Shown here one piece after another: positions 10,389 through 56,511 of a DNA stretch of 64,000 nucleotides. How positions within the stretch are numbered: the stretch's first letter is position 1; each line of letters opens with the position of its first letter. The position numbers and the translations under genes are program-made. Under the pieces are notes generated by a model, which had not been told where the DNA came from, did no database searches, and saw only the letters and a program-made list of their open reading frames with translations. Source of the stretch: Zootoca vivipara (lineage: Eukaryota); assembly GCF_963506605.1 (NCBI RefSeq), contig NC_083288.1, forward strand, positions 48,980,001 to 49,044,000, given 5' to 3'.

Positions 10389-13300
10389 TCACGACACCCA
10401 GGCGGCGAGCTGCTTCATTTCTTCGTCGTCGTCGTCCACCGCAGAGGCGGGCACTTTGGAGGCTGGCAAAAGGACGGAGGGAGGGAAAGAGTGAAATCAA
10501 AACGTAGGAACGGCACCCCAAAACTTCAACCCTCTTCCAAATGGTCCTTGGAGATCCCGCCTTTACTTAACTCCTTGCCTCGGGGTGCCTGTTTATTTAC
10601 TGGGTTTGTATGGGCTTTGAAGATGCTCGAACTCAGGACGAAGAGGAAGAGGAAGGCACGCTTGGCAAATCCTCACCGTGATTAACTCCTGCCCGGAAAC
10701 CTACATCCCCACTGTGGAAGGACGTGTGGATCCAGAAGTGGCCTCACTTACGGACTCAATGTTAAAGCTCTGTCTATGGAAGACCATCCTACTTGGCTAC
10801 GAGTGATCGCCCAAGAAGATACAGTGGTACCTTGGTTGCCAGACTTAAATCCGTTCCGGGAATCCGTTCCGACTCCCGGAACCATTCGAAAACAGAGGTG
10901 CGACTTCCGATTGGCTGCAGGAGCTCCCTGCAACTCAATCGGAAGCTGCATCGGATGTTTGGCTTCCAAAGAACGTTTGCAAACGGGAACACTCACTTCC
11001 AGGCTTGCGGCATTCGGGAGCGAAAACGTATGCGTACCAAGGCGTTCGAGAACCAAGGTACGACTGTAGTGCTTTCAGGCGGACGTCACAAAGCGGTTTG
11101 TGTAAGGTTACGACGAGAAGAACACACGCAAAATACAAAGGGCCTTCTCTTTTTAAAAAAGTCACAATATCCAGGCTGGAATAGGACCTTGGGAGACCCT
11201 AAGCCAGGCATCCCCAAACTTCGGCCCTCCAGATGTTTTGGACTACAATTCCCATCATCCCTGACCACTGGTCATAGAATCATAGAGTTGGAAGAGACCA
11301 CAAGGGCCATCCAGTCCAACCCCCTGCCAAGCAGGAAACACCATCAAAGCATTCTTGACATATGCCTGTCAAGCCTCTGCTTAAAGACCTCCAAAGAAGG
11401 AGACTCCACCACACTCCTTGGCAGCAAATTCCACTGCCGAATAGCTCTTACTGTCAGGAAGTTCTTCCTAATGTTTAGGTGGAATCTTCTTTCTTGAAGT
11501 TTGAATCCATTGCTCCGTGTCCGCTTCTCTGGAGCAACAGATCCCTGTTAGCCAGGGATCATGGGAGTTGTAGGCCAAAACATCTGGAGGGCCGCAGTTT
11601 GGGGATGCCTGCCCTAAGCACTTAAGAGCTTTTGGTGCCCCCATACCTATCCAATTCAAAATATAAGCCATAAAATAAAATTTTATTTTTCAAAATGAAG
11701 CAGAACCTACATTCAGATGGAAAACAATGCTTATTTTGGTACGCTTCTACTTTACATCCACCCACTTCTCCAGATTTGTTGGGGCCACTACCCCCCCCCC
11801 GCACCAGCCAGAGGCAGGATGGGAGCTGTAATCCAGTCACACTTGGAGACCCCCAGGTTGGCAAAGCCAGGGCTTTGAGGGGAGCTGAAACAGCAGGCGG
11901 CGCCATCCCAAGACCCAGGGGCCTGTGCCCACCTCGCTGCCTCCGCACCCCCCCTTACCTGGCACACTGGGCAGGCGAGAGGCAGGCACGGTGGGCAGTT
12001 CGGGGGTCGGTTCCCCAACATTCAGAAGCTCCTTGTCCAAGTCTTCCTGCTCCATCTCCTCCAGCTCAGCTAGCAGCTCATCCTGAGGGCAGCAAAGGAA
12101 GGCAGAGTGGAGAGTTGAAACAAAAACAGGTACTCATTGCCAATTCCCCCTAAAGCCGACCGCCCCACTCCTCTGGGGCTCAGCCCCCCACAAAGGCAGA
12201 TCTACAGAACCGAAACAGAGCTCCCTCCCTCCTCCACTTTTCAGGAGGGAGGGGTCCCCCGCTTTTGACGTTACCTCATCTACATCGTCCCCAAAGCCGA
12301 CGGGCTTTGAGATGGCGTCCGAGATCTGCTGGGCGATGTCCTGCTGTTCTGTGATCTCAGCCATCAGGTCGTCCACTTTGTCAATGTCCCTGGAGAGACC
12401 GGGGGGGGGGGGTAGAGGGTGAGACGAAAGCAGAAAGGGCAGCTGGGGTGTGGTGGGGTGGGGGGCTGCTTTTGCCGTCGCACCAAAGTGCACCTCAAGC
12501 GCAGGAAAGCTCCACCTCGAGGGAAGCAGGGGAGGCCAAAGGCGGAGGAGGGAAGCGGCAAATCCGAGATCCGGGTCCGAAAACGCGAGGAGCCGCCACG
12601 GAACAAAATGCAAAAGGCAGGACTAAGAGGGATGGAGCCAGCCTTTGAAAGGGGAACCTTTCTTTAGCCAAGGGCTGCATTCCCACCAGGGCATTTCACA
12701 TTTCCGGACACACACACAAGCCTCTCCATCCTGGAGTTCAAAGACACGGACCAGCCAGGTAAGCTTACTGGAGGGGGGCTCAGAGATGACCCAAAAAGGG
12801 GCGTGGCCTGGGCAGAGGATTCTGGGAGCTGTAGTTCGTTAAGGCCACCAAGCGTCGCTAGGAGGGCCCTATTCCTCCTCACAGAGCAGCCATTCCCAGA
12901 ATCCCCCAGGAAGAGAGAGTGGCTGTTAAACAGCCCCAACAACCATGTGAAAGGAATAATGGAGTCTCTCAGCACCCTTATTGGACTACAACTCCCAGGA
13001 TTCTTTGCGGGAAGCCACAACTGTCAGCCTTGTGCTTTAAGTAGAGGGCATGCACATGGCCGGACAGGGTCTCCTCCTTCGCACTCGGGGCTTGCTGCTC
13101 CCTCCGCCTTCTCTTTTGCCTTTTCCAGGCTCCACACATGCCCCCCGTCTCCCTCCCTCCAGGCAGCGCAGGAGCCTGCCACGAAGGCCCCACAGCCTCG
13201 GGACCCACATGTGCTGATGGGCTTCCTTCATGGCCCGGGCTGCGTCTGACATGGTCTTGAGCACTTCAGTGTTGGTGGTGGCGTTCTCCAGAGCCTCGCG

Positions 13301-17474: not shown

Positions 17475-21804
<4,330 letters not shown>

Positions 21805-25847: not shown

Positions 25848-31359
<5,512 letters not shown>

Positions 31360-32260: not shown

Positions 32261-33378
32261 TCGCAGTTGTCCCCTCCAAAACAAACCCCATATTCTTGAT
32301 GTGAACCACGTCCCCTTCGCTCTGAGTGGGGTCGGGGTCCGGGGCAGCGATGCAGAGTTAGCATAACTTATGCTAACATGGCAGTGCATTGCTGGGGGAG
32401 GGGTCAGGTGGTGGGTTTGATGGTTCTGTGTCACCTGCGCCCCTGTCCCAGTTTGCTGGCAGTGGCACCCTACTGGTTTCAAGAGAATCAGCCGCCCCGC
32501 AGGTGTGCTCAAATGCTGGGGTCCGCCATACAGAGGCTTCCCTGGAAGTGCATCCATTTCAAAACTTGCTGTCAATTTATAGCATTAGGATGTGGGGTTG
32601 TGTTCCTGGTACCAGCGGGATAATGAGAGATAAGAGGTGCAAAGTCTTTGCAAAAGCCTGTAATCGTCTCCGCTTCCCTTGGCGATAAGAGCTGCTGATA
32701 GGTTTGGATGCCACAGCTGAGGACGAGGTTCGTCAAGGCCTTGAAGACTGGTGACAAGCCCATAGAGAGAGACGATGGTTGAGGTTTTAATGCGGCAGGT
32801 GCTGCAGCAGGTGCTGTGGCAGGTCTAAAGTCTGTCGTGGGGTGTCTTAATCGTTAATGGTATTGGAAGTCCAAGAGGTAGCGTCTAAGAGGTGGTGGAG
32901 ATGGAGTTGTAGTTTGATGAACAACTTAACTGAAGACTAGAGACTCAGAGATTATGTGGAGATCAGGGATACAATGGGCCTAGTGCAGGCATCCCCAAAC
33001 TTCGGCCCTCCAGATGTTTTGGAATACAATTCCTATCTTCCTCGACCACTGGTCCTGTTAGTTCATGGGAGATTCACTTGCTAGATCATGGGAGTTGTAG
33101 GCCAAAACATCTGGACGGCCGCAGTTTGGGGATGCCTGGCCTAGTGTTTTTCCATAGAGTGGCATGTGTGCAATCACTGCGAGAAACTGAGGCAGAAGGA
33201 GAGGTCATGAACGGCTGTTAGTGTTAGCAAGCCGTGGTTCGTGGAAGCAACGCAAGTCACGGCCTGTAAGATAACATGCATTTTAATGCCAAAACCCACT
33301 ACTGGTTGCTATAGGAAAGTCTTTTCATTTTCATTTTCAATATTGACAAAATGGGCTTTGAAAAGAAATGTGTGTCTT

Positions 33379-45984: not shown

Positions 45985-47279
45985 GCCGTCCCTCCCTTCA
46001 CCCCAAGGTCCTAGGGCAGGTTACAGCAACCAGAACACCATATTAACAGCTTAATCAGCTTGCAATCACAAAAACAAGATGGGTCTTGGAAATAGCCCCC
46101 CCAAATGTCAAAAAAACCAGGGTGAAGAGGTGTGTTTTCAGCATTTGCAAGGAGCTGTCTTATTTAGGAGCTGTCACAGAGAATGATCCTTCCTGGGCTG
46201 CAAACCCCCCCCCCAATAGCTTCTGAGGATGGAGGAACTATTGAGCCTGTCCCTTCAATCCCAACTTCTGCCCAACACAGATAAGCAAACCCACAACCAA
46301 ACTTGCATGTTCAAGTGCACCCCAGCCCGACTTGCCTCTCAACATCGCCCCCCAGCCTCACCTGCACATACTTCTCCCTCTCCCTACGGTCACTCAGCAA
46401 CCCAAACACCAGATCCCGGAAGTTCTCCTGAGCCAGCTGCACCATCTTCACGTCCTGAGGCGTCTGGGGTGAAAGGAAAAGATGGCCACAGTAAGAAGGG
46501 ATGGCTGCTGCTTAATGAAAGGCGAACATATAGGCAGACACTCACAGCTTTGGTGTGGGGCTGAGTCTCCCCCTCTGGAAAGAACGTATCTAGATTGTCA
46601 TAGATCTTCCCATTTGGCTGCTCCTCCTGAAGCATGCTCATGATCACCTGATGCAAGAGAGAAAAGAAAAGTCAAGGAGCTGACCTCTATGGTGACCTGG
46701 GAGAACTTGTGGAGCAGGGGTGGGAGGAAAGGATCAAAGAGCCATTCGGTGATAATAAGTGAAAACCAGCAAAGACTGACCAGGCTACTGAGAGATATGG
46801 ACATCAGGCTGGCGCCTTCACCTGACTCTTCTTTGTTTAGGCCAGCCTACCCAAATATTTATAATGTTGACATGTGCTTTAAGCTGGGTTTTTTACTGAT
46901 CATTTTATTGTATTATTCTTTTTGTAAACTGCTTTGAAGCGTTTCCTCCCCCCCCCCCAAGTCAAGTGGTAGATAAGAGAAAAAACACTGGTTATTTTGT
47001 TTTTAACACCCCTCAACCCCGCCAGTGCTATCGCATGACATCTGTACACATGAAAAATGTTGGCCTGAGACCTACCTTTGCCTGCAGGCCCAACTGCAGC
47101 TTGGCAAGGTGCCGGAAGTGCACCAAGTCAGGCGCCGCCTCGTTCACGGCCTCCAGCAGCGCCAGCACGCGGGGGAAGTCGTTGACCTGCTGCTTCTGCA
47201 CCACGTGCCAGGCCGCAGCGGCCACGAGCCGCAACGCGACGCAGGGATCAGGAGCCGCCCTTGCTGCTGCTTCTGCCAT
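43175..47279 (-). CDS. TINF2: TERF1-interacting nuclear factor 2 (shelterin TIN2), tentative 388 aa, up to 12 coding exons
   Basis: Confident exons: 47076-47279 (LRLVAAAAWHVVQ..FPRVLALL..LQLGLQAK), 46546-46647, 46362-46463, 45076-45186 (LEKDYGEAF..LFHDYLWQLEKTLP), 44794-44893, 43735-43796 (EDFVLDS), 43175-43252 (YQCTRHNTLIPTLRQYL*). Tentative middle exons: 44576-44708, 44450-44491, 44189-44315, 44046-44093, 43904-43961, giving a 1167-nt in-frame model. Putative non-coding exon with donor at 49137. Confidence 0.85.
45225..45667 (-). mobile_element. Solo LTR (Gypsy-like), 443 bp, in TINF2 intron
   Basis: TG..CA ends; 5-bp TSD ACCTC at 45220-45224 / 45668-45672; homologous to 61814-62262. Confidence 0.85.
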
Positions 47280-49823: not shown

Positions 49824-51858
49824 TTATTGTATGCCACCCAGCCACTCTGGGTGGCATACAGCACATTTTTTAAAAAATGCAAAACATTAGACATTAAAAA
49901 TTTCCCAATACAGGGTTGCCTTCAGATGTCTTCTAAAAGTCAGATAGTTCTTTGTTTCCTTAACATCTGATGGCAGGGGGCACCACCACCGAGAAGGCCC
50001 TCTGCCTGGTTCCCTGTAACCTCATTTCTCGCAGGGAGGGAACCGCCAGAAGGCCCTTGGAGCTGGACCTCAGTGTCCGGGCAGAACGATGGGGGGTGGA
50101 GACGCTCCTTCAGGTATACGGGGCCATTTAGGGCTTTCAAGGTCAGCACCAACACTGTGCCGCCCTATATTGACTATATAATTATGACTGTAAGAAACAC
50201 TTGCCAATTGCTGTGTTGGTTGCAATCTCCTGTAATAAGGCTTCACAAGCCGTATAGGAAAAGACCCTGATGTTGGGAAAGATGGAGGGCACTAGGAGAA
50301 GGGGACGACAGAGGATGAGATGGTTGGACAGTGTTCTCGAAGCTACCAACATGAGTTTGACCAAACTGTGGGAGGCAGTGGAAGACAGGAGTGCCTGGCG
50401 TGCTCTGGTCCATGGGGTCACGAAGAGTTGGACACGACTAAATGACTAAACAACAACAAGCTGTTGTACCGCAAAACTGCTCCATGCCCGTCTCCCTGTC
50501 CCGTTTGGATTAGGGTGCTATGTTTGCAGCTCAGTCGCAGCTCTGGTAAAAACTTGGGTTTCTCCACTGATTAATATGGAAGCTGCTCCCAGACTATTGA
50601 AACTAGACAAATGCTAGATGTGCTTGCAAGGAAGTCTCTTGGTGGTGTGAGTGTGTCAGTTGGGGTGGTCCAGTGCTTAATAAAAACCCCTAGCCAGACA
50701 ATGGATGATGCCTTTGCGTCCGTCCCCACCAAGGCTGTGGATTTATATCTGTAAGATGGGAGTCTGGAGTAGAATGGGCAGTTGAAGTGGTCAAACAAGT
50801 CTTTGTTGAGTTAATGGTCCTAGCTAAGCTTGTTAAAGCATCATTTTACATGTCTATATACAGCGGCACCTTCAAACGCTGAAAACGCGGAAGTAAGTGT
50901 TCAGGTTTTCGAACCTTTTTCGGAAGCCGAACGTCCAATGCAGCTGTCAACTATTGTTTCTGGGGCACCTGCATCAATCAGAAGCTGCACCTTGGTTTTC
51001 GAACATTTCAGAAGTCAAATGGACTTCCGGAACGGATTAAGTTTGGCGCTTTTGTTTTTGCTATTTATTTTGCTTTTTTTGTTTATGAGGCTTTTTCGGT
51101 TCATTTGTTTTTGTGACTGCGTGGAACCCAGTTCAGCTACTGACTGATTGATTGTGTGACTGCATAAACGGATAAAATCCCCCCCATCCAAACAATGACT
51201 ATCATCAGTGCAGGTAAGGGGAAAGAATAACTTTAATTTTTATCATTGACAATACTGTCTTATTTATTTTATACTACAGTGTATTGATTATTGCTTTCAT
51301 TTTATAGATCAGGCATCCCCAAACTGCGGCCCTCCAGATGTTTTGGCCTGCAACTCCCATGATCCCTAGCTAAGAGGACCAGTGTCAGGGATGATGGGAA
51401 TTGTAGTCCAAAACATCTGGAGGGCCGAAGTTTGGGGATGCCTGTTATAGATCAATGGCCTCGTTAGATAGTAAAACCCATGTTAAATTGCTGTTTTAGG
51501 GGTTGTTTTTAAAAGTCTGGAACGGATTAGTCCATTTTGCATTACTTTATATGGGAAAGCACGCCTTGGTTTTGAAATGCTTTGGTTTTGGAACGGACTT
51601 CTGGAACGGATTAAGTTTGAGAACCAAGGTACTGCTGTAATTGGTAAAGTACAGATGCATTGTCATAGGAGCAACTAGCTCAGAAGGAAGAGGGATAGGG
51701 CCTTTATTCCACCTCTACATTGCCCCCAAATAAAGCTTTCAAACAGAGATAATCCTGACATGTCTCAAAGGGGGCTGTCTCCCGGTCAAGTAGATGTACG
51801 ATACGAGGCATTCTTATTCAGACTGTGACTATCGAAGAGGAAATAGGAACAGAGTTTG

Positions 51859-52599
51859 CAGGCCCGTCTTAACCACATCCAGCGCCGTGGTGCAAAGGTC
51901 CCTCTGGCGCCCCCTCCCTTCCCAAAATTTAGCTTGGAGCGGAGGGCGCTGTTGGGGCCGCTGCCGGCACTCTCGCTGCTGCCCAGCAGCCGCGAGGAGC
52001 TGGGCTGGCCAGCGAGTCGCTTAGGAGAGGCACGCAACGCTGGGTGAGCGCGGCCCCCTTTGGCCCCGGCCAAGCGAGAGCGACGGCACCCGCCGCAACA
52101 GGTCGCCGCTGCCTGCTGGCTTTGTGCAGCCGCTGCCATCTGCGGCAGGAAGGGAGGCGGTGCGGCACAGCGGCTGACGGGGACCCTGCCCAGCGGTAGT
52201 GAGCCCACCGCTGCCTGCCTGCTGGGCTCCCCTGGGCAGGCATCGGCTGGCGGTGTGGCTGGGGGAGCTCTGTCCGCGCAGTAGCGTCGGCACGGGGCCG
52301 GTAGGAGCCGGAGTCCCGCTCGCCTCCCCCGGAGCAAAGCCGCACCATGCTGCGGTTCCTGCGCAGGACCTTCGGCCGTCCATCAATGCAGCGCTACGGG
52401 TGAGCAGCCGGCGAAGGAGACGAGCGCGACAGGGCGCCCCGAGTGGCCTTGGTGGGAGTTCTGCTGGCCGCGCCAGGCGCCCCGGCACCTCCGCACATCC
52501 CCTCCCTAGCTGTGGCCCCTGGACCTCTTCCCTGGCGCCCTCCAGAGCCCAGCGCCGTGGTTCCCTGCGCCACTAGCCTCTATGGCTAAGGCGGGCCTG
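51859..52599. mobile_element. 741-bp non-autonomous hAT element with captured gene fragment
   Basis: TIRs CAGGCCCGTCTTAACCA / CAGGCCCGCCTTAGCCA (15/17); 8-bp TSD AGAGTTTG at 51851-51858 / 52600-52607. Confidence 0.9.
52347..52510 (+). pseudogene. EPB41L4B: Transduplicated fragment of EPB41L4B exon 1 with premature stop
   Basis: gcaccATG then MLRFLRRTFGRPSMQRYG*AAGEGDERD..., matching the N-terminus of human EPB41L4B as I recall it (MLRFLRRTFGRRSMQRY...GDERD). Confidence 0.75.
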
Positions 52600-53214
52600 A
52601 GAGTTTGTCAGCCTTACTCATTTCAAAGGAAACTCACTTCTCATCCAGTGACGTTTGAAAATTGCGTCTCGCACCCCCTCAACTCTCTAACTGGAAATTG
52701 CTAATCCAAGCAATGAGATGCAGGCCATTACCCCTTTTATATCTCTACTAAGGGTGGCTCTGCTTCAATTTCCTTCCCTGAGTTTCCTTCTGTGGAATTA
52801 CAGCAGCATCCCCTCTCTCCCTGCCTCAGTTTACCTTCAAGACCAAATTTCCCTTCTCCCTTTCCCTCTCCATGACCACATCTCCCCTCCCCACACTTCA
52901 CTTTCCTTCCCCAATGCCATAATGGGTTGTTTCTTTCTCAGCTTCTGAACCTACAAGAGTGTCAGAAATATCTGCTCCTCCAGCTTCTCTTCCACCCACA
53001 GCTTCCCACAAAAAATCCCCTTCGCTTGCTCTCTTGCCTGTGGGGTGGGGGAAGCCTCCTATGGTGCTGGGGACTAAGAAAGGGAGAACACCCCCACCCC
53101 ACCCCAAGCAGGTCATTTTGCTCCCTAACTCTCCTATACTCCTCCTCCTGAAATGACCCAAATGGATACCATGAAAGGGCCAAGTTTGGCTCCATTCACA
53201 TGCCTGGTGTGAAT

Positions 53215-53816
53215 TAGTGTATGTTTGTGAAACATGGACCACTTATAAACACCATCTGCAACTCCTCGAAAGATTCCATCAACGGTGTCTCCGAAATATT
53301 TTGCACATCACTTGGGAAGACAGGCGAACTAATATCAGTGTACTGGAAGAAGCAAAGATCACCAGTGTTGAAAGCAATGATTCTTCAACATCAACTTTGT
53401 TGGACTGGTCATGTTGTGCGGATGCCTGATTATCGTCTTCCAAAGCAACTACTCCATTCCGAACTTAAAAATGGAAAGCGTAATGCTGGTGGTCAACAAA
53501 AGAGGTTTGAAGACTGTCTCAAGGCAAATCTTAAAAAATATAGTATAAACACCGACAATTGGGAAACACTTGCCTGTGAGCGCTCCAATGGGAGAACAGC
53601 CTTTACGAAAGGTGTCATGGACTTTGAAGACGCTTGAACTCAGGACGCAAGGGAGAGGAAGGCACGCTTGGCAAACCCTCACCATGATCAACTCCCATTG
53701 GGAAACCTATGTCCCCACTGTGGAAGGAAGTGTGGATCCAAAACTGGCCTCCACAGTCACTTATGGACAGTCACTATGGAAGACTTACTAGGCTATGAGG
53801 GATTGCCAAAGAAGAA
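53215..53816 (+). mobile_element. RTE-clade LINE 3' fragment (non-BovB)
   Basis: CETWTTY..LERFHQRCLRNILHITWEDRRTN..WTGHVVRMPDYRLPKQLL..RNAGGQQKRF; (GAA)n tail. Confidence 0.88.
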
Positions 53817-55228: not shown

Positions 55229-56511
55229 TCAGACCGGCCGCCCCGCCCGCACGGCAGGTGACCCACGGGCATTGGGGGAGCCTCGAGGGTCTGGCTGGCG
55301 GGCCGGAGACCCGCGGGCATTGGCTGGGCTGTTGCGGCCTGTCGGCTGGCGAGCTGGAGATGCTCTGGTGAGGGCAGGAGAAGGTGCAGGCGAGGCTCGG
55401 GCAGGGGCCGGAGAAGCCCGTCCGTGGGCCGGGGAAGCTCGTCCGCGGGCCGGAGACCCCCGAACAGGGGCTGGAGAAGCCGACGAGGGGCCTCTTGGGG
55501 GACCCTGGGTCACCTCGATCGTCAGCACCCCGTGGACCTGGGAGAGCTGAGGGCTGTCCAGGCTGGCAACCAGCTGGCGTTGGCCTGCACGGAGAGGTGT
55601 GAACGTCTGTCGTAGCGTCACTGTTTGGTGTGGGCCGATATTTCTGGGAAAAGGGGAAAAAGAGAGAGTCAGGTTCCCCAGCTTGTGTTTTCAGAAAGGC
55701 CAGAGTTTGTAAGTAACATGGTAAAGGTAAAGGACCCCTGGACGGTTAAGTCCAGTCAAAGGTGACTATGGGGTTGTGGCACTCCTCTCGCTTCAGGCCG
55801 AGGGAGCCGGCGTTTGCCCACAGGCAGCTTTCTGGGTCATGTGACCAGCAGGACTAAACCGCTTCTGGTGGAACGGGACACCGTGACGGAAACCAGAGCG
55901 CACGGAAACGCTGTTTACCTTCCCGCCCCAGTGGTACCTATTTATCTACTTGGGCTGGCATGCTTTTGAACTGCTAGGTTGGCAGGAGCTGGGACAGAGC
56001 AACGGGAGCTTCACCCCGTTGGGGGGATTCAAACCGCCGACCTTCTGATCAGCAAGCCCAAGAGGCTCAGTGGTTTAGAGCACAGCGCCACCCATGTCCT
56101 GGTCCGGAGGCCAGGGCTTGAGGAGTCCAACCCTCCAATTCTGGGTATGCGAGAATCTAATTGCAGGTTCTTACTAGAAACATTCTGCCTTACTTTAGTC
56201 AACTCTTCACAAATTTGGTTTAAGGTTCTACTGCAAAGCCTCTGTCATAAGCAACTCCCAAATTAAGGACAAAATGAAAACTAGGGAGCCGTCTGGCAAC
56301 CGAGCCGGATGGGCAGGGTATAAATATTACCAGTGCTTCCCCCCCCCCAAAAAATATTTAGGGGTTCTCTCATTTTCCTACTCATATTGAAATACTGCCC
56401 ATCAATGAGGCTGAATTTAGATTAACAAAATTTTAAGGGGTATGCGTACCCCTGCATCCCCCCCCCAGAAAAAAGCACTGAATATTTCAATAATAATATC
56501 ATTTTAATATA

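What the first reader, a model, noticed from the sequence alone, without database searches (positions are those of the whole stretch)
51859..52599. hAT transposon carrying a captured EPB41L4B first exon (Pack-TIR-type gene capture)
Seen: an intact 741-bp element with 17-bp TIRs and a perfect 8-bp TSD. Its CpG-island-like interior has a Kozak ATG at 52347 followed by MLRFLRRTFGRPSMQRYG*AAGEGDERDRAPR...APPHIP. Known (from memory): human EPB41L4B starts MLRFLRRTFGRRSMQRY...GDERD and is not part of this syntenic block. Inference: a cut-and-paste DNA transposon copied the 5'UTR and start of exon 1 of a distant FERM-domain gene and moved it about 2.5 kb upstream of the TINF2 promoter. The TGA is a plausible CGA>TGA CpG decay. 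Such capture is well known in plants (Pack-MULEs) and much less documented in vertebrates.
Basis: partly seen in the sequence, partly recalled or inferred. Interest (0 to 1): 0.85.

Follow-up and report, generated by a model that had tools for sequence, protein, structure and literature searches.

The report
Lizard hAT transposon carrying a gene start
A 741-base cut-and-paste (hAT-type) transposon between the TGM1 and TINF2 genes carries a dead copy of another gene's promoter region and first 51 codons (most likely EPB41L4B). Read data suggest this cargo is present in roughly ten to thirty copies in this species, a known kind of gene capture that is rarely seen amplified in vertebrates.

Summary
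Element 51859-52599 has 15/17 inverted ends and a perfect 8-bp target duplication (AGAGTTTG). It also has the stated ATG (52347) and peptide with a TGA at codon 19.

Reads add four things:
- The outer ~75-80 bp on each side belong to a hAT-type family with thousands of copies. It is present in this species and in two related ones.
- The GC-rich interior (73% GC, CpG o/e 0.80) occurs in about 10-30 diverged copies in a second individual. A related species has about one copy, in a context that does not continue into the transposon end.
- All other copies, the related species and the few sense RNA reads have CGA, not TGA, at 52401. They also have Arg, not Pro, at codon 12.
- This copy is not detectably transcribed.

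Nested shared substitutions argue that copying went on after capture.

No tool could confirm that the gene is EPB41L4B; that rests on the recalled human N-terminus. The element lies 4.6 kb from the TINF2 start codon, not 2.5 kb from its promoter.

Pack-hAT capture in animals is published (Tan 2021), so this is a new member of a known kind. The scan has noted similar first-exon cargoes (MCAT, OSBPL10, UNC13B, GALNT12) elsewhere in this genome, but not this cargo.

The parts
51851..51858 (.). left target-site duplication AGAGTTTG
   Evidence: Direct reading; identical to 52600-52607; scan.
51859..51937 (+). Left terminus from the hAT-type family. It includes the 17-bp TIR (51859-51875) and a 13-bp motif CCAGCGCCGTGGT (51879-51891) that recurs in direct orientation in the right terminus.
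   Evidence: Summed contig depth in bin 51859-51932 is 20668 in X2, against about 12-15 in unique flank. It is 11403 in organism B and 2542 in organism C. It drops to 1492 in the next bin. TIR pair I4 and direct repeat D8. The inner boundary is approximate, taken from depth.
51938..52346 (+). Cargo, upstream part: CpG-island-like DNA read as the promoter and 5'UTR of the parent gene.
   Evidence: GC 73%, CpG o/e 0.80. Depth in X2 is 176-1492, i.e. multicopy; in organism B it is 3.6-14. Sense RNA reads from another copy start at about 52230. The promoter/5'UTR role is inferred.
52347..52499 (+). Cargo, coding part: the ATG and the first 51 codons of the parent gene (EPB41L4B-like N-terminus). 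Broken here by TGA at 52401-52403 and changed at codon 12 (Arg to Pro).
   Evidence: Translation. An organism B contig of 995 bp matches 52288-52500 at 91% without gaps and then runs on unlike the stretch (record 5). Other copies, organism B and RNA reads read C at 52401 and GG at 52381-52382.
52401..52403 (+). Private stop codon TGA (CGA in all other copies). The T also creates a GGTGAG splice-donor-like string.
   Evidence: At 52401 T>C, 359.7 of 376.8 depth (17 contigs) in X2, organism B 12.8/12.8, RNA 3/3. The context is CpG-decay type.
52501..52524 (+). 24 bp of unassigned origin between the end of the parent-like homology and the high-copy right terminus (filler, or a low-copy part of the transposon).
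   Evidence: The organism B contig match ends at 52500. Bin 52451-52524 has interior-level depth (522), and bin 52525-52598 has 29014.
52525..52599 (+). Right terminus from the hAT-type family. It includes the TIR (52583-52599) and the second copy of CCAGCGCCGTGGT (52549-52561).
   Evidence: Depth 29014 in X2, 2879 in organism B, 231 in organism C. At 52589 and 52591 the family majority reads G and A, which gives a right TIR closer to the left one. Repeats I4 and D8.
52600..52607 (.). right target-site duplication AGAGTTTG
   Evidence: Direct reading. The X2 contig covering 52570-53247 spans this junction with 0 differences (record 24).

Best explanation
This is a non-autonomous hAT-superfamily transposon of the Pack-TIR (Pack-hAT) kind. 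About 79 bp on the left and 75 bp on the right come from a hAT-type family with thousands of copies. The roughly 560-590 bp between them is a copy of a host gene's CpG-island promoter/5'UTR and first 51 codons, most likely EPB41L4B.

The inferred history is as follows:
1. The host DNA was copied into a family member by template switching during repair or replication.
2. The chimera kept both transposase-recognised ends, so a hAT transposase supplied in trans moved and multiplied it to roughly 10-30 copies in this species.
3. One copy landed in the TGM1-TINF2 intergenic region and made the 8-bp duplication.
4. It then decayed, mainly at CpGs: CGA>TGA at codon 19, and CGG>CCG>CCA at codon 12.
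5. Here it is a silent relic, not a gene.

Shown: the TIR/TSD anatomy, the high-copy termini, the multicopy interior, the private stop, the lack of transcripts from this copy, and an intact expressed version elsewhere. Inferred: the capture mechanism, transposition of the chimera as a unit, and the gene's name.
For: Anatomy:
- TIRs match 15/17 and the TSD is a perfect 8 bp. There were 0 such structures in 40 shuffles.
- A second, smaller element with related ends (CAGGGCCGTCTTAAGCA, 27/35 over the first 35 bp) and its own 8-bp TSD ACCCTGCT lies at 26143-26407.

Copy number:
- Termini depth is 20668 and 29014, against about 12-15 for unique flank in X2. The termini are also high in organisms B and C.
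- Interior depth in X2 is 176-1492, with 15-19 distinct contigs over the ATG region at about 87-90% identity.
- In organism B the interior depth is 3.6-14. One 995-bp contig there matches only 52288-52500 (91%, no gaps); its other 782 bp are unlike the stretch.

Substitutions:
- At 52401, C is read in 359.7 of 376.8 depth in X2, in organism B, and in 3 of 3 RNA reads. The remainder equals one locus, so the stop is private to this copy.
- At 52381 and 52382, 7 and 9 contigs read G while subsets share C or A. This nested series (CGG, CCG, CCA) implies copying continued after capture.
- 6 of 11 changes specific to this copy are of CpG-decay type.

Expression and presence:
- RNA reads on the interior all have the first mate on the minus strand. 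In the usual stranded library that means sense RNA. Each carries 9-11 differences from this copy and the ancestral letters, so they come from another copy.
- Flank depth in RNA is 0.
- X2 contigs span both junctions with 0 differences (records 17 and 24).

Gene identity:
- Substituting the letters read elsewhere gives MLRFLRRTFGRRSMQRYGRAAGEGDERDGAPR. Both amino-acid changes move towards the recalled human EPB41L4B N-terminus (recall, not a tool result).

What is not here:
- There is no homologue of the cargo elsewhere in the 64-kb window.
- No FERM-like motifs occur in any frame.

The kind is published: Pack-TIRs in animals, most of them hAT (PMC8277862).
Against: - No other copy was seen with its ends, so shared chimeric junctions and distinct TSDs are not shown.
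- Three X2 contigs (records 20, 22, 23) lose likeness inside the cargo, at 52116-52157 and 52335-52360. They have 100-235 bp of unlike sequence beyond those points, so the copies are not all collinear with this element.
- Depth dips at 52155-52228, which could mean the cargo is a mosaic of two repeated pieces.
- Summed contig depth is a poor copy-number measure.
- The parent locus was never located, and its FERM exons were never seen.
- EPB41L4B identity failed every tool route: searches gave nothing usable.
- No empty site was seen in organism B. Its flank contig stops at 51850, and 149 joints were not shown.
- The fifth base of this element's TIR (CAGGC) departs from the hAT YARNG rule, and the TSD does not fit the weak nTnnnnAn preference.
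Confidence: 0.72

Rival explanations
1. In-situ gap filling without transposition. An ordinary family member was already at this site, broke, and was repaired by copying the host gene's 5' end into it. This is the main route Tan et al. propose for single-copy animal Pack-TIRs. On this reading the TSD dates the plain element, not the chimera.
For: This is the commonest origin of animal Pack-TIRs in PMC8277862. No empty site was seen in organism B. That species' flank contig ends at 51850, just before the site.
Against: The interior is multicopy in this species, with nested shared substitutions. That needs copying of the chimera, or many independent fills from one parent. The cargo has no source within the window, whereas gap filling shows a strong bias to sources less than 15 kb away. 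In Tan et al. the multicopy cases are the distal ones. Organism B shows only one copy of 52288-52500, and it is not in this context.
Confidence: 0.12
2. The interior is multicopy for a reason unrelated to these hAT ends. The gene's 5' region, or part of it, would have been spread by another repeat (a Helitron, another transposon, a segmental duplication). This element would then be a single capture of one such copy, or a mosaic of two repeated pieces.
For: Contigs 20, 22 and 23 lose likeness inside the cargo and run on unlike it. Depth dips at 52155-52228. First-reader notes from this genome mention a Helitron with a first-exon cargo (a lead only).
Against: The nested substitution series includes this copy's own states. 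That places this copy inside the family of copies rather than beside it. The depth steps at about 51937 and 52525 coincide with the edges of the termini.
Confidence: 0.12
3. The likeness to EPB41L4B is misremembered or coincidental. The cargo would come from another gene's 5' end (for example the paralogue EPB41L5) or from non-coding CpG-island DNA.
For: No tool confirmed the gene. The match is a 17-residue peptide plus a short GDERD stretch, known only from recall.
Against: The letters in the other copies restore Arg12 and Gly29. Both were predicted by the recalled human sequence before the reads were seen. The open frame runs from a good ATG for 51 codons in the intact version. The few RNA reads are in sense. 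The recalled EPB41L5 start (MLSFF...) fits worse.
Confidence: 0.15
4. It is the genuine first exon of a FERM gene at this place, or a misassembly.
For: None beyond the ATG and the CpG-island look.
Against: The TIRs and TSD are exact. Both junctions are reproduced with 0 differences in contigs of a run from another study. The stop is at codon 19. No FERM-like motif occurs anywhere in the window. The downstream DNA is the 3' end of TGM1 on the other strand. No RNA covers this copy or its flanks.
Confidence: 0.01

Closest known systems
Animal Pack-TIRs, in particular multicopy Pack-hAT such as Pack-hAT-N8_XT of Xenopus tropicalis (Tan et al. 2021, Nat Commun, PMC8277862)
   Same: Both have non-autonomous hAT ends around a few hundred bp of host DNA taken from a gene's 5' region; the frog case carries 291 bp of the CAPSL 5'UTR. 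In both the parent is distant and the copies are amplified.
   Different: The apparent copy number here is about 10-30, against 3 in the frog case. Only 4 of the 370 Pack-TIRs in that survey were multicopy. The cargo here includes the start codon and 51 codons as well as upstream DNA. The host is a lizard, and that survey found 0 Pack-TIRs in its one lizard genome, where only 77 TIR elements were counted. TSDs of the other copies were not seen here.
Pack-MULEs of rice and other grasses
   Same: DNA transposons that pick up gene fragments, prefer GC-rich sequence and raise local GC where they land (PMC5861414). Here a 73% GC cargo sits in 41-47% GC flanks.
   Different: The superfamily differs: hAT with an 8-bp TSD and 17-bp TIRs, against Mutator with 8-11 bp TSDs and long TIRs. 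There is no evidence of expression here. A bias to 5' exons in this lizard is so far only suggested by unchecked notes of this scan.
Ordinary hAT MITEs of this genome (for example 11205-11611, 32986-33138 and 51310-51444 with TIR CAGGCATCCCCAAACTT, and 26143-26407 with TIR CAGGGCCGTCT)
   Same: 8-bp TSDs, CAG... ends, short length and no transposase gene.
   Different: Those with TIR CAGGCATCCCC belong to another family. The element at 26143-26407 shares about 27/35 of the first 35 bases with the element studied, but its 74% GC interior is unrelated and of unknown origin.

Membership tests
hAT superfamily (non-autonomous member) | 8-bp target-site duplication | tested here: met
   AGAGTTTG on both sides, 8/8. 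The related element at 26143-26407 has ACCCTGCT on both sides.
hAT superfamily (non-autonomous member) | Short terminal inverted repeats (about 10-25 bp) | tested here: met
   17 bp, matching 15/17. The family majority letters at 52589 and 52591 change the match.
hAT superfamily (non-autonomous member) | Terminal motif YARNG and the weak TSD preference nTnnnnAn (from the established literature, recalled) | tested here: inconclusive
   This element starts CAGGC, with C instead of G as the fifth base. The relative at 26143 starts CAGGG, which fits. Neither TSD fits nTnnnnAn on either strand.
hAT superfamily (non-autonomous member) | Mobilised by a transposase with the hAT dimerisation domain, i.e. 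an autonomous partner with matching ends | not testable with these tools
   The element and the window contain no transposase ORF, and the genome cannot be searched here.
hAT superfamily (non-autonomous member) | Ends belong to a repeated family | tested here: met
   The terminal bins have over 1000 times the unique depth in X2. They are also high in organisms B and C.
Pack-TIR (as used by Tan et al. 2021) | Internal sequence that is not transposon-derived and has an identifiable parental copy elsewhere | tested here: inconclusive
   A roughly single-copy homologue in a non-transposon context exists in organism B, and an intact expressed version exists in organism A. The parental locus itself was not located.
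Pack-TIR (as used by Tan et al. 2021) | For the multicopy class: the same chimeric structure at several loci with distinct TSDs | tested here: inconclusive
   The interior is multicopy with nested shared substitutions. Junctions and TSDs of the other copies were not visible, and some contigs are not collinear.
EPB41L4B (parent of the cargo) | N-terminal sequence of the annotated protein matches codons 1-51 | not testable with these tools
   All protein routes failed or were barred by length limits. The match is to the recalled human N-terminus only. Letters read in other copies move two residues towards it.
EPB41L4B (parent of the cargo) | Parent copy followed by FERM-domain exons | not testable with these tools
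   The parent locus is not in the window. No FERM-like motifs occur in the window.

The most novel reading that the evidence does not exclude
The hAT elements of this lizard may act as a vertebrate counterpart of rice Pack-MULEs. On this reading they repeatedly pick up CpG-island promoters with first exons of unrelated genes (this EPB41L4B-like piece; by unchecked notes also MCAT, OSBPL10, UNC13B and GALNT12). They then multiply each chimera to tens of copies. That would scatter ready-made promoters, start codons and, after CpG decay, new splice-donor-like sites (GGTGAG here) through the genome.
Probability: 0.3. Interest if true: 0.7.

Novelty: new member of a known kind. Interest (0 to 1): 0.45.

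Why it matters
Gene-fragment capture by cut-and-paste transposons is a major source of new gene structures in plants. In animals it is catalogued but almost always single-copy and thought to arise without transposition.

This would be a lizard hAT chimera carrying a promoter and start codon, amplified to perhaps tens of copies, in a genome where other such first-exon cargoes have been noted. It points to a still-recent, transposition-dependent capture system in a vertebrate. With the assembly in hand it gives a direct test of whether capture is biased to CpG-island 5' ends.

For this locus itself the consequence looks nil. The copy is broken and silent.

Tried and rejected
Attempts to confirm the gene name, none of which worked:
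- phmmer of the 32-aa stop-free piece (52305-52400) against 1.84 billion representatives gave one chance hit, a repetitive 784-aa protein matching the translated UTR part.
- The search for homologous proteins on the 61-aa piece after the stop found nothing.
- The same search on the 155-aa antisense ORF, meant to fish out other copies or the parent locus, found nothing.
- The 32-aa piece is below that tool's 40-aa minimum.
- PDB sequences gave nothing.
- The ESM Atlas gave nothing.
- Pfam gave nothing on either piece.
- A full-text search for the peptide gave nothing.
- The scan's own index has no note for FERM or EPB41L4B beyond this finding, and nothing by sequence.

These blanks say little. 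The length windows of the tools exclude a 500-900 aa protein matched by a 17-residue stretch.

Other points:
- The idea that the TGA is really part of the parent's splice donor (G|GTGAGC) was rejected. Other copies, organism B and the RNA all read CGA there, and the frame stays open to codon 51. The donor-like string is a by-product of the mutation.
- A genuine gene or a misassembly was rejected (see rivals).
- An empty site in organism B could not be judged.

Full report
**1. What is in the sequence.**

- The element runs from 51859 to 52599 (741 bp).
- Its ends are CAGGCCCGTCTTAACCA and, reverse-complemented, CAGGCCCGCCTTAGCCA. They match 15/17 (pair I4).
- It is flanked by AGAGTTTG at 51851-51858 and at 52600-52607.
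- A scan for a perfect 8-bp duplication around inverted ends matching at least 15/17 found this structure and six others in the window, and none in 40 shuffles. Most of the others are plainly further DNA transposons.
- The element is 71% GC. Its interior 51946-52500 is 73% GC with 59 CpGs (o/e 0.80), in flanks of 41-47% GC.
- The ATG at 52347 opens MLRFLRRTFGRPSMQRYG, then TGA (52401-52403). The frame then reads AAGEGDERDRAPR...APPHIP and on to a TAA at 52587.

**2. Context.**

- The ORF at 47028-47279 on the minus strand matches Pfam TINF2_N (E 2e-13), so TINF2 starts there.
- The ORF at 55229-55621 on the minus strand carries the end of a transglutaminase C-terminal domain. The Pfam match is weak (E 0.007) and agrees with a first-reader note on TGM1.
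- The element therefore sits in the TGM1-TINF2 spacer. It is 2.6 kb beyond the TGM1 stop and 4.6 kb upstream of the TINF2 ATG, with its ATG on the opposite strand to both genes.
- No FERM-like motif occurs in any frame of the window, and the cargo has no second copy in the window.

**3. The ends belong to a large transposon family.**

One call of read laying was available. It covered 51119-53338 in 74-bp bins aligned to the element. The runs were:
- X21: RNA raw reads, same species.
- X2: contigs from another study, same species.
- X14: DNA contigs of a related species B, whose flanks differ by 4-5.5%.
- X16: contigs, probably RNA, of species C.

Unique flank has summed contig depth of about 12-15 in X2 and 10-14 in X14. 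The two terminal bins of the element stand far above that:

| Run | Left terminal bin | Right terminal bin |
|---|---|---|
| X2 | 20668 | 29014 |
| X14 (species B) | 11403 | 2879 |
| X16 (species C) | 2542 | 231 |

- Depth falls to interior values within a few bases of 51937 and rises again at about 52525.
- The termini are therefore about 79 and 75 bp of a family with thousands of copies, shared by related species.
- A second, 265-bp element at 26143-26407 has ends CAGGGCCGTCT (11/11) and its own 8-bp duplication ACCCTGCT. It matches the first 35 bases of the element studied at 27/35, and its 74% GC interior is unrelated.
- The 8-bp duplication, the short CAG-initial inverted ends and the high copy number point to the hAT superfamily.
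- The YARNG rule is met by the relative (CAGGG) but not strictly by this element (CAGGC). No transposase could be looked for.

**4. The interior is host-gene-like and multicopy in this species.**

In species B:
- The interior has depth 3.6-14, about one copy.
- One 995-bp contig matches only 52288-52500, at 91% and without gaps.
- Its other 782 bp are unlike the stretch. It therefore does not continue into the transposon terminus or the rest of the element, on whichever side the unmatched part lies.
- That contig accounts for all the depth there. Species B thus seems to have one homologue, in a non-transposon context, and no copy at this site. Contigs show presence better than absence.
- The match ends right after codon 51 (His-Ile-Pro), 24 bp before the high-copy terminus begins.

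In the same species (X2):
- The interior has depth 176-1492.
- The region around the ATG is covered by 15-19 distinct contigs at about 87-90% identity, some with gaps. That is roughly 10-30 copies.
- X2 contigs also span both junctions of this insertion with no differences (records 17 and 24). The insertion is real and present in a run from another study.

**5. The stop codon and the history of the copies.**

- At 52401, C is read by 359.7 of 376.8 depth in X2 (17 contigs), by species B, and by 3 of 3 RNA reads. What remains equals one locus.
- At 52381-52382, 7 and 9 contigs read G (CGG, Arg) while smaller subsets share C or A. The series CGG to CCG (which makes a new CpG) to CCA is nested.
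- That nesting is what is expected if the chimera went on being copied while it mutated. It is hard to get from independent captures.
- Of 11 positions where this copy departs from the others, 6 are of CpG-decay type.
- Only two departures in 213 bp (52401 and 52461) look private. This insertion therefore seems younger than the split from species B.
- The T at 52401 also creates GGTGAG, a splice-donor-like string. No RNA uses it.

**6. Expression.**

- In the RNA run the flanks next to the element have depth 0. The interior has depth 1.7-3.9 over about 52230-52460.
- Every such read has its first mate on the minus strand, which means sense RNA in the usual stranded library. Other bins show the library is strand-biased.
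- Each read carries 9-11 differences from this copy. The reads show the ancestral letters but not species B's private ones.
- That is what mRNA of this species' parent gene would look like.
- This copy shows no transcription in that sample. The tissue is unknown and only about 6% of the run was read.

**7. Which gene.**

- Putting the letters read elsewhere into the frame gives MLRFLRRTFGRRSMQRYGRAAGEGDERDGAPR....
- From my own recall, human EPB41L4B begins MLRFLRRTFGRRSMQRY and has GDERDGGPR a little further on. The paralogue EPB41L5 begins MLSFF.
- Both residues restored by the reads (Arg12, Gly29) move towards that recalled sequence. This is modest independent support.
- No tool could test it. 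The tools' length windows exclude a long protein matched over 17 residues.
- I put the gene name at about 0.8 and mark it as resting on recall.

**8. Mechanism and rivals.**

The best reading is a Pack-hAT:
- Host 5' DNA was copied between the ends of a family member by template switching.
- The chimera was then moved in trans and amplified.
- This copy inserted here and decayed.

The main rival is in-situ gap filling of a resident element, which is the usual origin of single-copy animal Pack-TIRs (PMC8277862).
- It fits poorly with the multicopy interior, the nested substitutions and the absence of a nearby source.
- It is not excluded for lack of a visible empty site.

A second rival is that the copies were spread by something other than these ends.
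- Three X2 contigs lose likeness inside the cargo (52116-52157, 52335-52360), and depth dips at 52155-52228.
- The copies are therefore not all collinear, and the cargo could be a mosaic.

A genuine gene or a misassembly is excluded.

**9. What is known.**

- Tan et al. 2021 found 370 Pack-TIRs in 100 animal genomes. Of these, 208 have hAT ends and only four are multicopy (three in frog, one in alligator).
- One frog case carries a 5'UTR in three copies.
- Their one lizard genome yielded 0 Pack-TIRs, with only 77 TIR elements counted. Lizards were effectively not surveyed.
- Rice Pack-MULEs prefer GC-rich gene pieces (PMC5861414).
- This element is a new member of that known kind. It is notable for its apparent copy number and for carrying a promoter-like region plus a start codon.

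**10. Notes from the rest of this scan.**

- Other notes on this genome list hAT elements said to carry first exons of MCAT, OSBPL10, UNC13B and GALNT12, and a hAT-bounded CpG island. For MCAT, a follow-up reports tens of copies by depth.
- I did not test these. They are leads for the wider reading given in the section on the most novel reading.

**11. Limits.**

- Each reads tool could be called once, and only part of its tables was printed.
- No tool here searches this genome.

Noticed in passing
window 26143-26407 (TSD ACCCTGCT at 26135-26142 and 26408-26415): A second hAT-type element of 265 bp. Its TIRs CAGGGCCGTCT match 11/11, and its ends are related to those of the element studied. The interior is 74% GC (CpG o/e 0.67) and of unknown origin. 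It holds an ATG-initiated open frame ([12 protein letters not shown]...) and a 12-bp perfect hairpin (CTGAGAGGTGCG / CGCACCTCTCAG). It may be another GC-rich cargo.
   Followed up: partly
window 11205-11611, 32986-33138, 51310-51444: Three MITEs of another hAT-like family (TIR CAGGCATCCCCAAACTT/G, 16/17), each with its own perfect 8-bp TSD (CCCTAAGC, GCCTAGTG, TTATAGAT). The third is nested in a very high-copy SINE-like repeat. Contigs and RNA reads show that repeat without the MITE (joints skipping 143 bp at 51301/51306 to 51445/51450).
   Followed up: partly
window 18311-18420: A 110-bp element with TIRs CAGAAGCGACTTTTGGT / CAGAAGTGACTTTTGAT (15/17) and the palindromic 8-bp TSD AGCATGCT.
   Followed up: no
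window 51879-51891 and 52549-52561: A perfect 13-bp motif CCAGCGCCGTGGT occurs once in each terminus of the element, in direct rather than inverted orientation. It may be a subterminal transposase-binding motif.
   Followed up: no
window 52398-52406: The C>T change that makes the stop codon also makes GG|GTGAGC, a consensus-like 5' splice site right after codon 18. No RNA read uses it.
   Followed up: partly
window 51119-51710 and 53191-53338: The flanks hold very high-copy repeats, with summed depth up to 4 million in DNA contigs. They are abundantly and partly strand-specifically represented in RNA-seq. They are shared by species A, B and C.
   Followed up: no
window 47028-47279 (-): The first coding exon of TINF2 (Pfam TINF2_N, E 2e-13).
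   Followed up: yes
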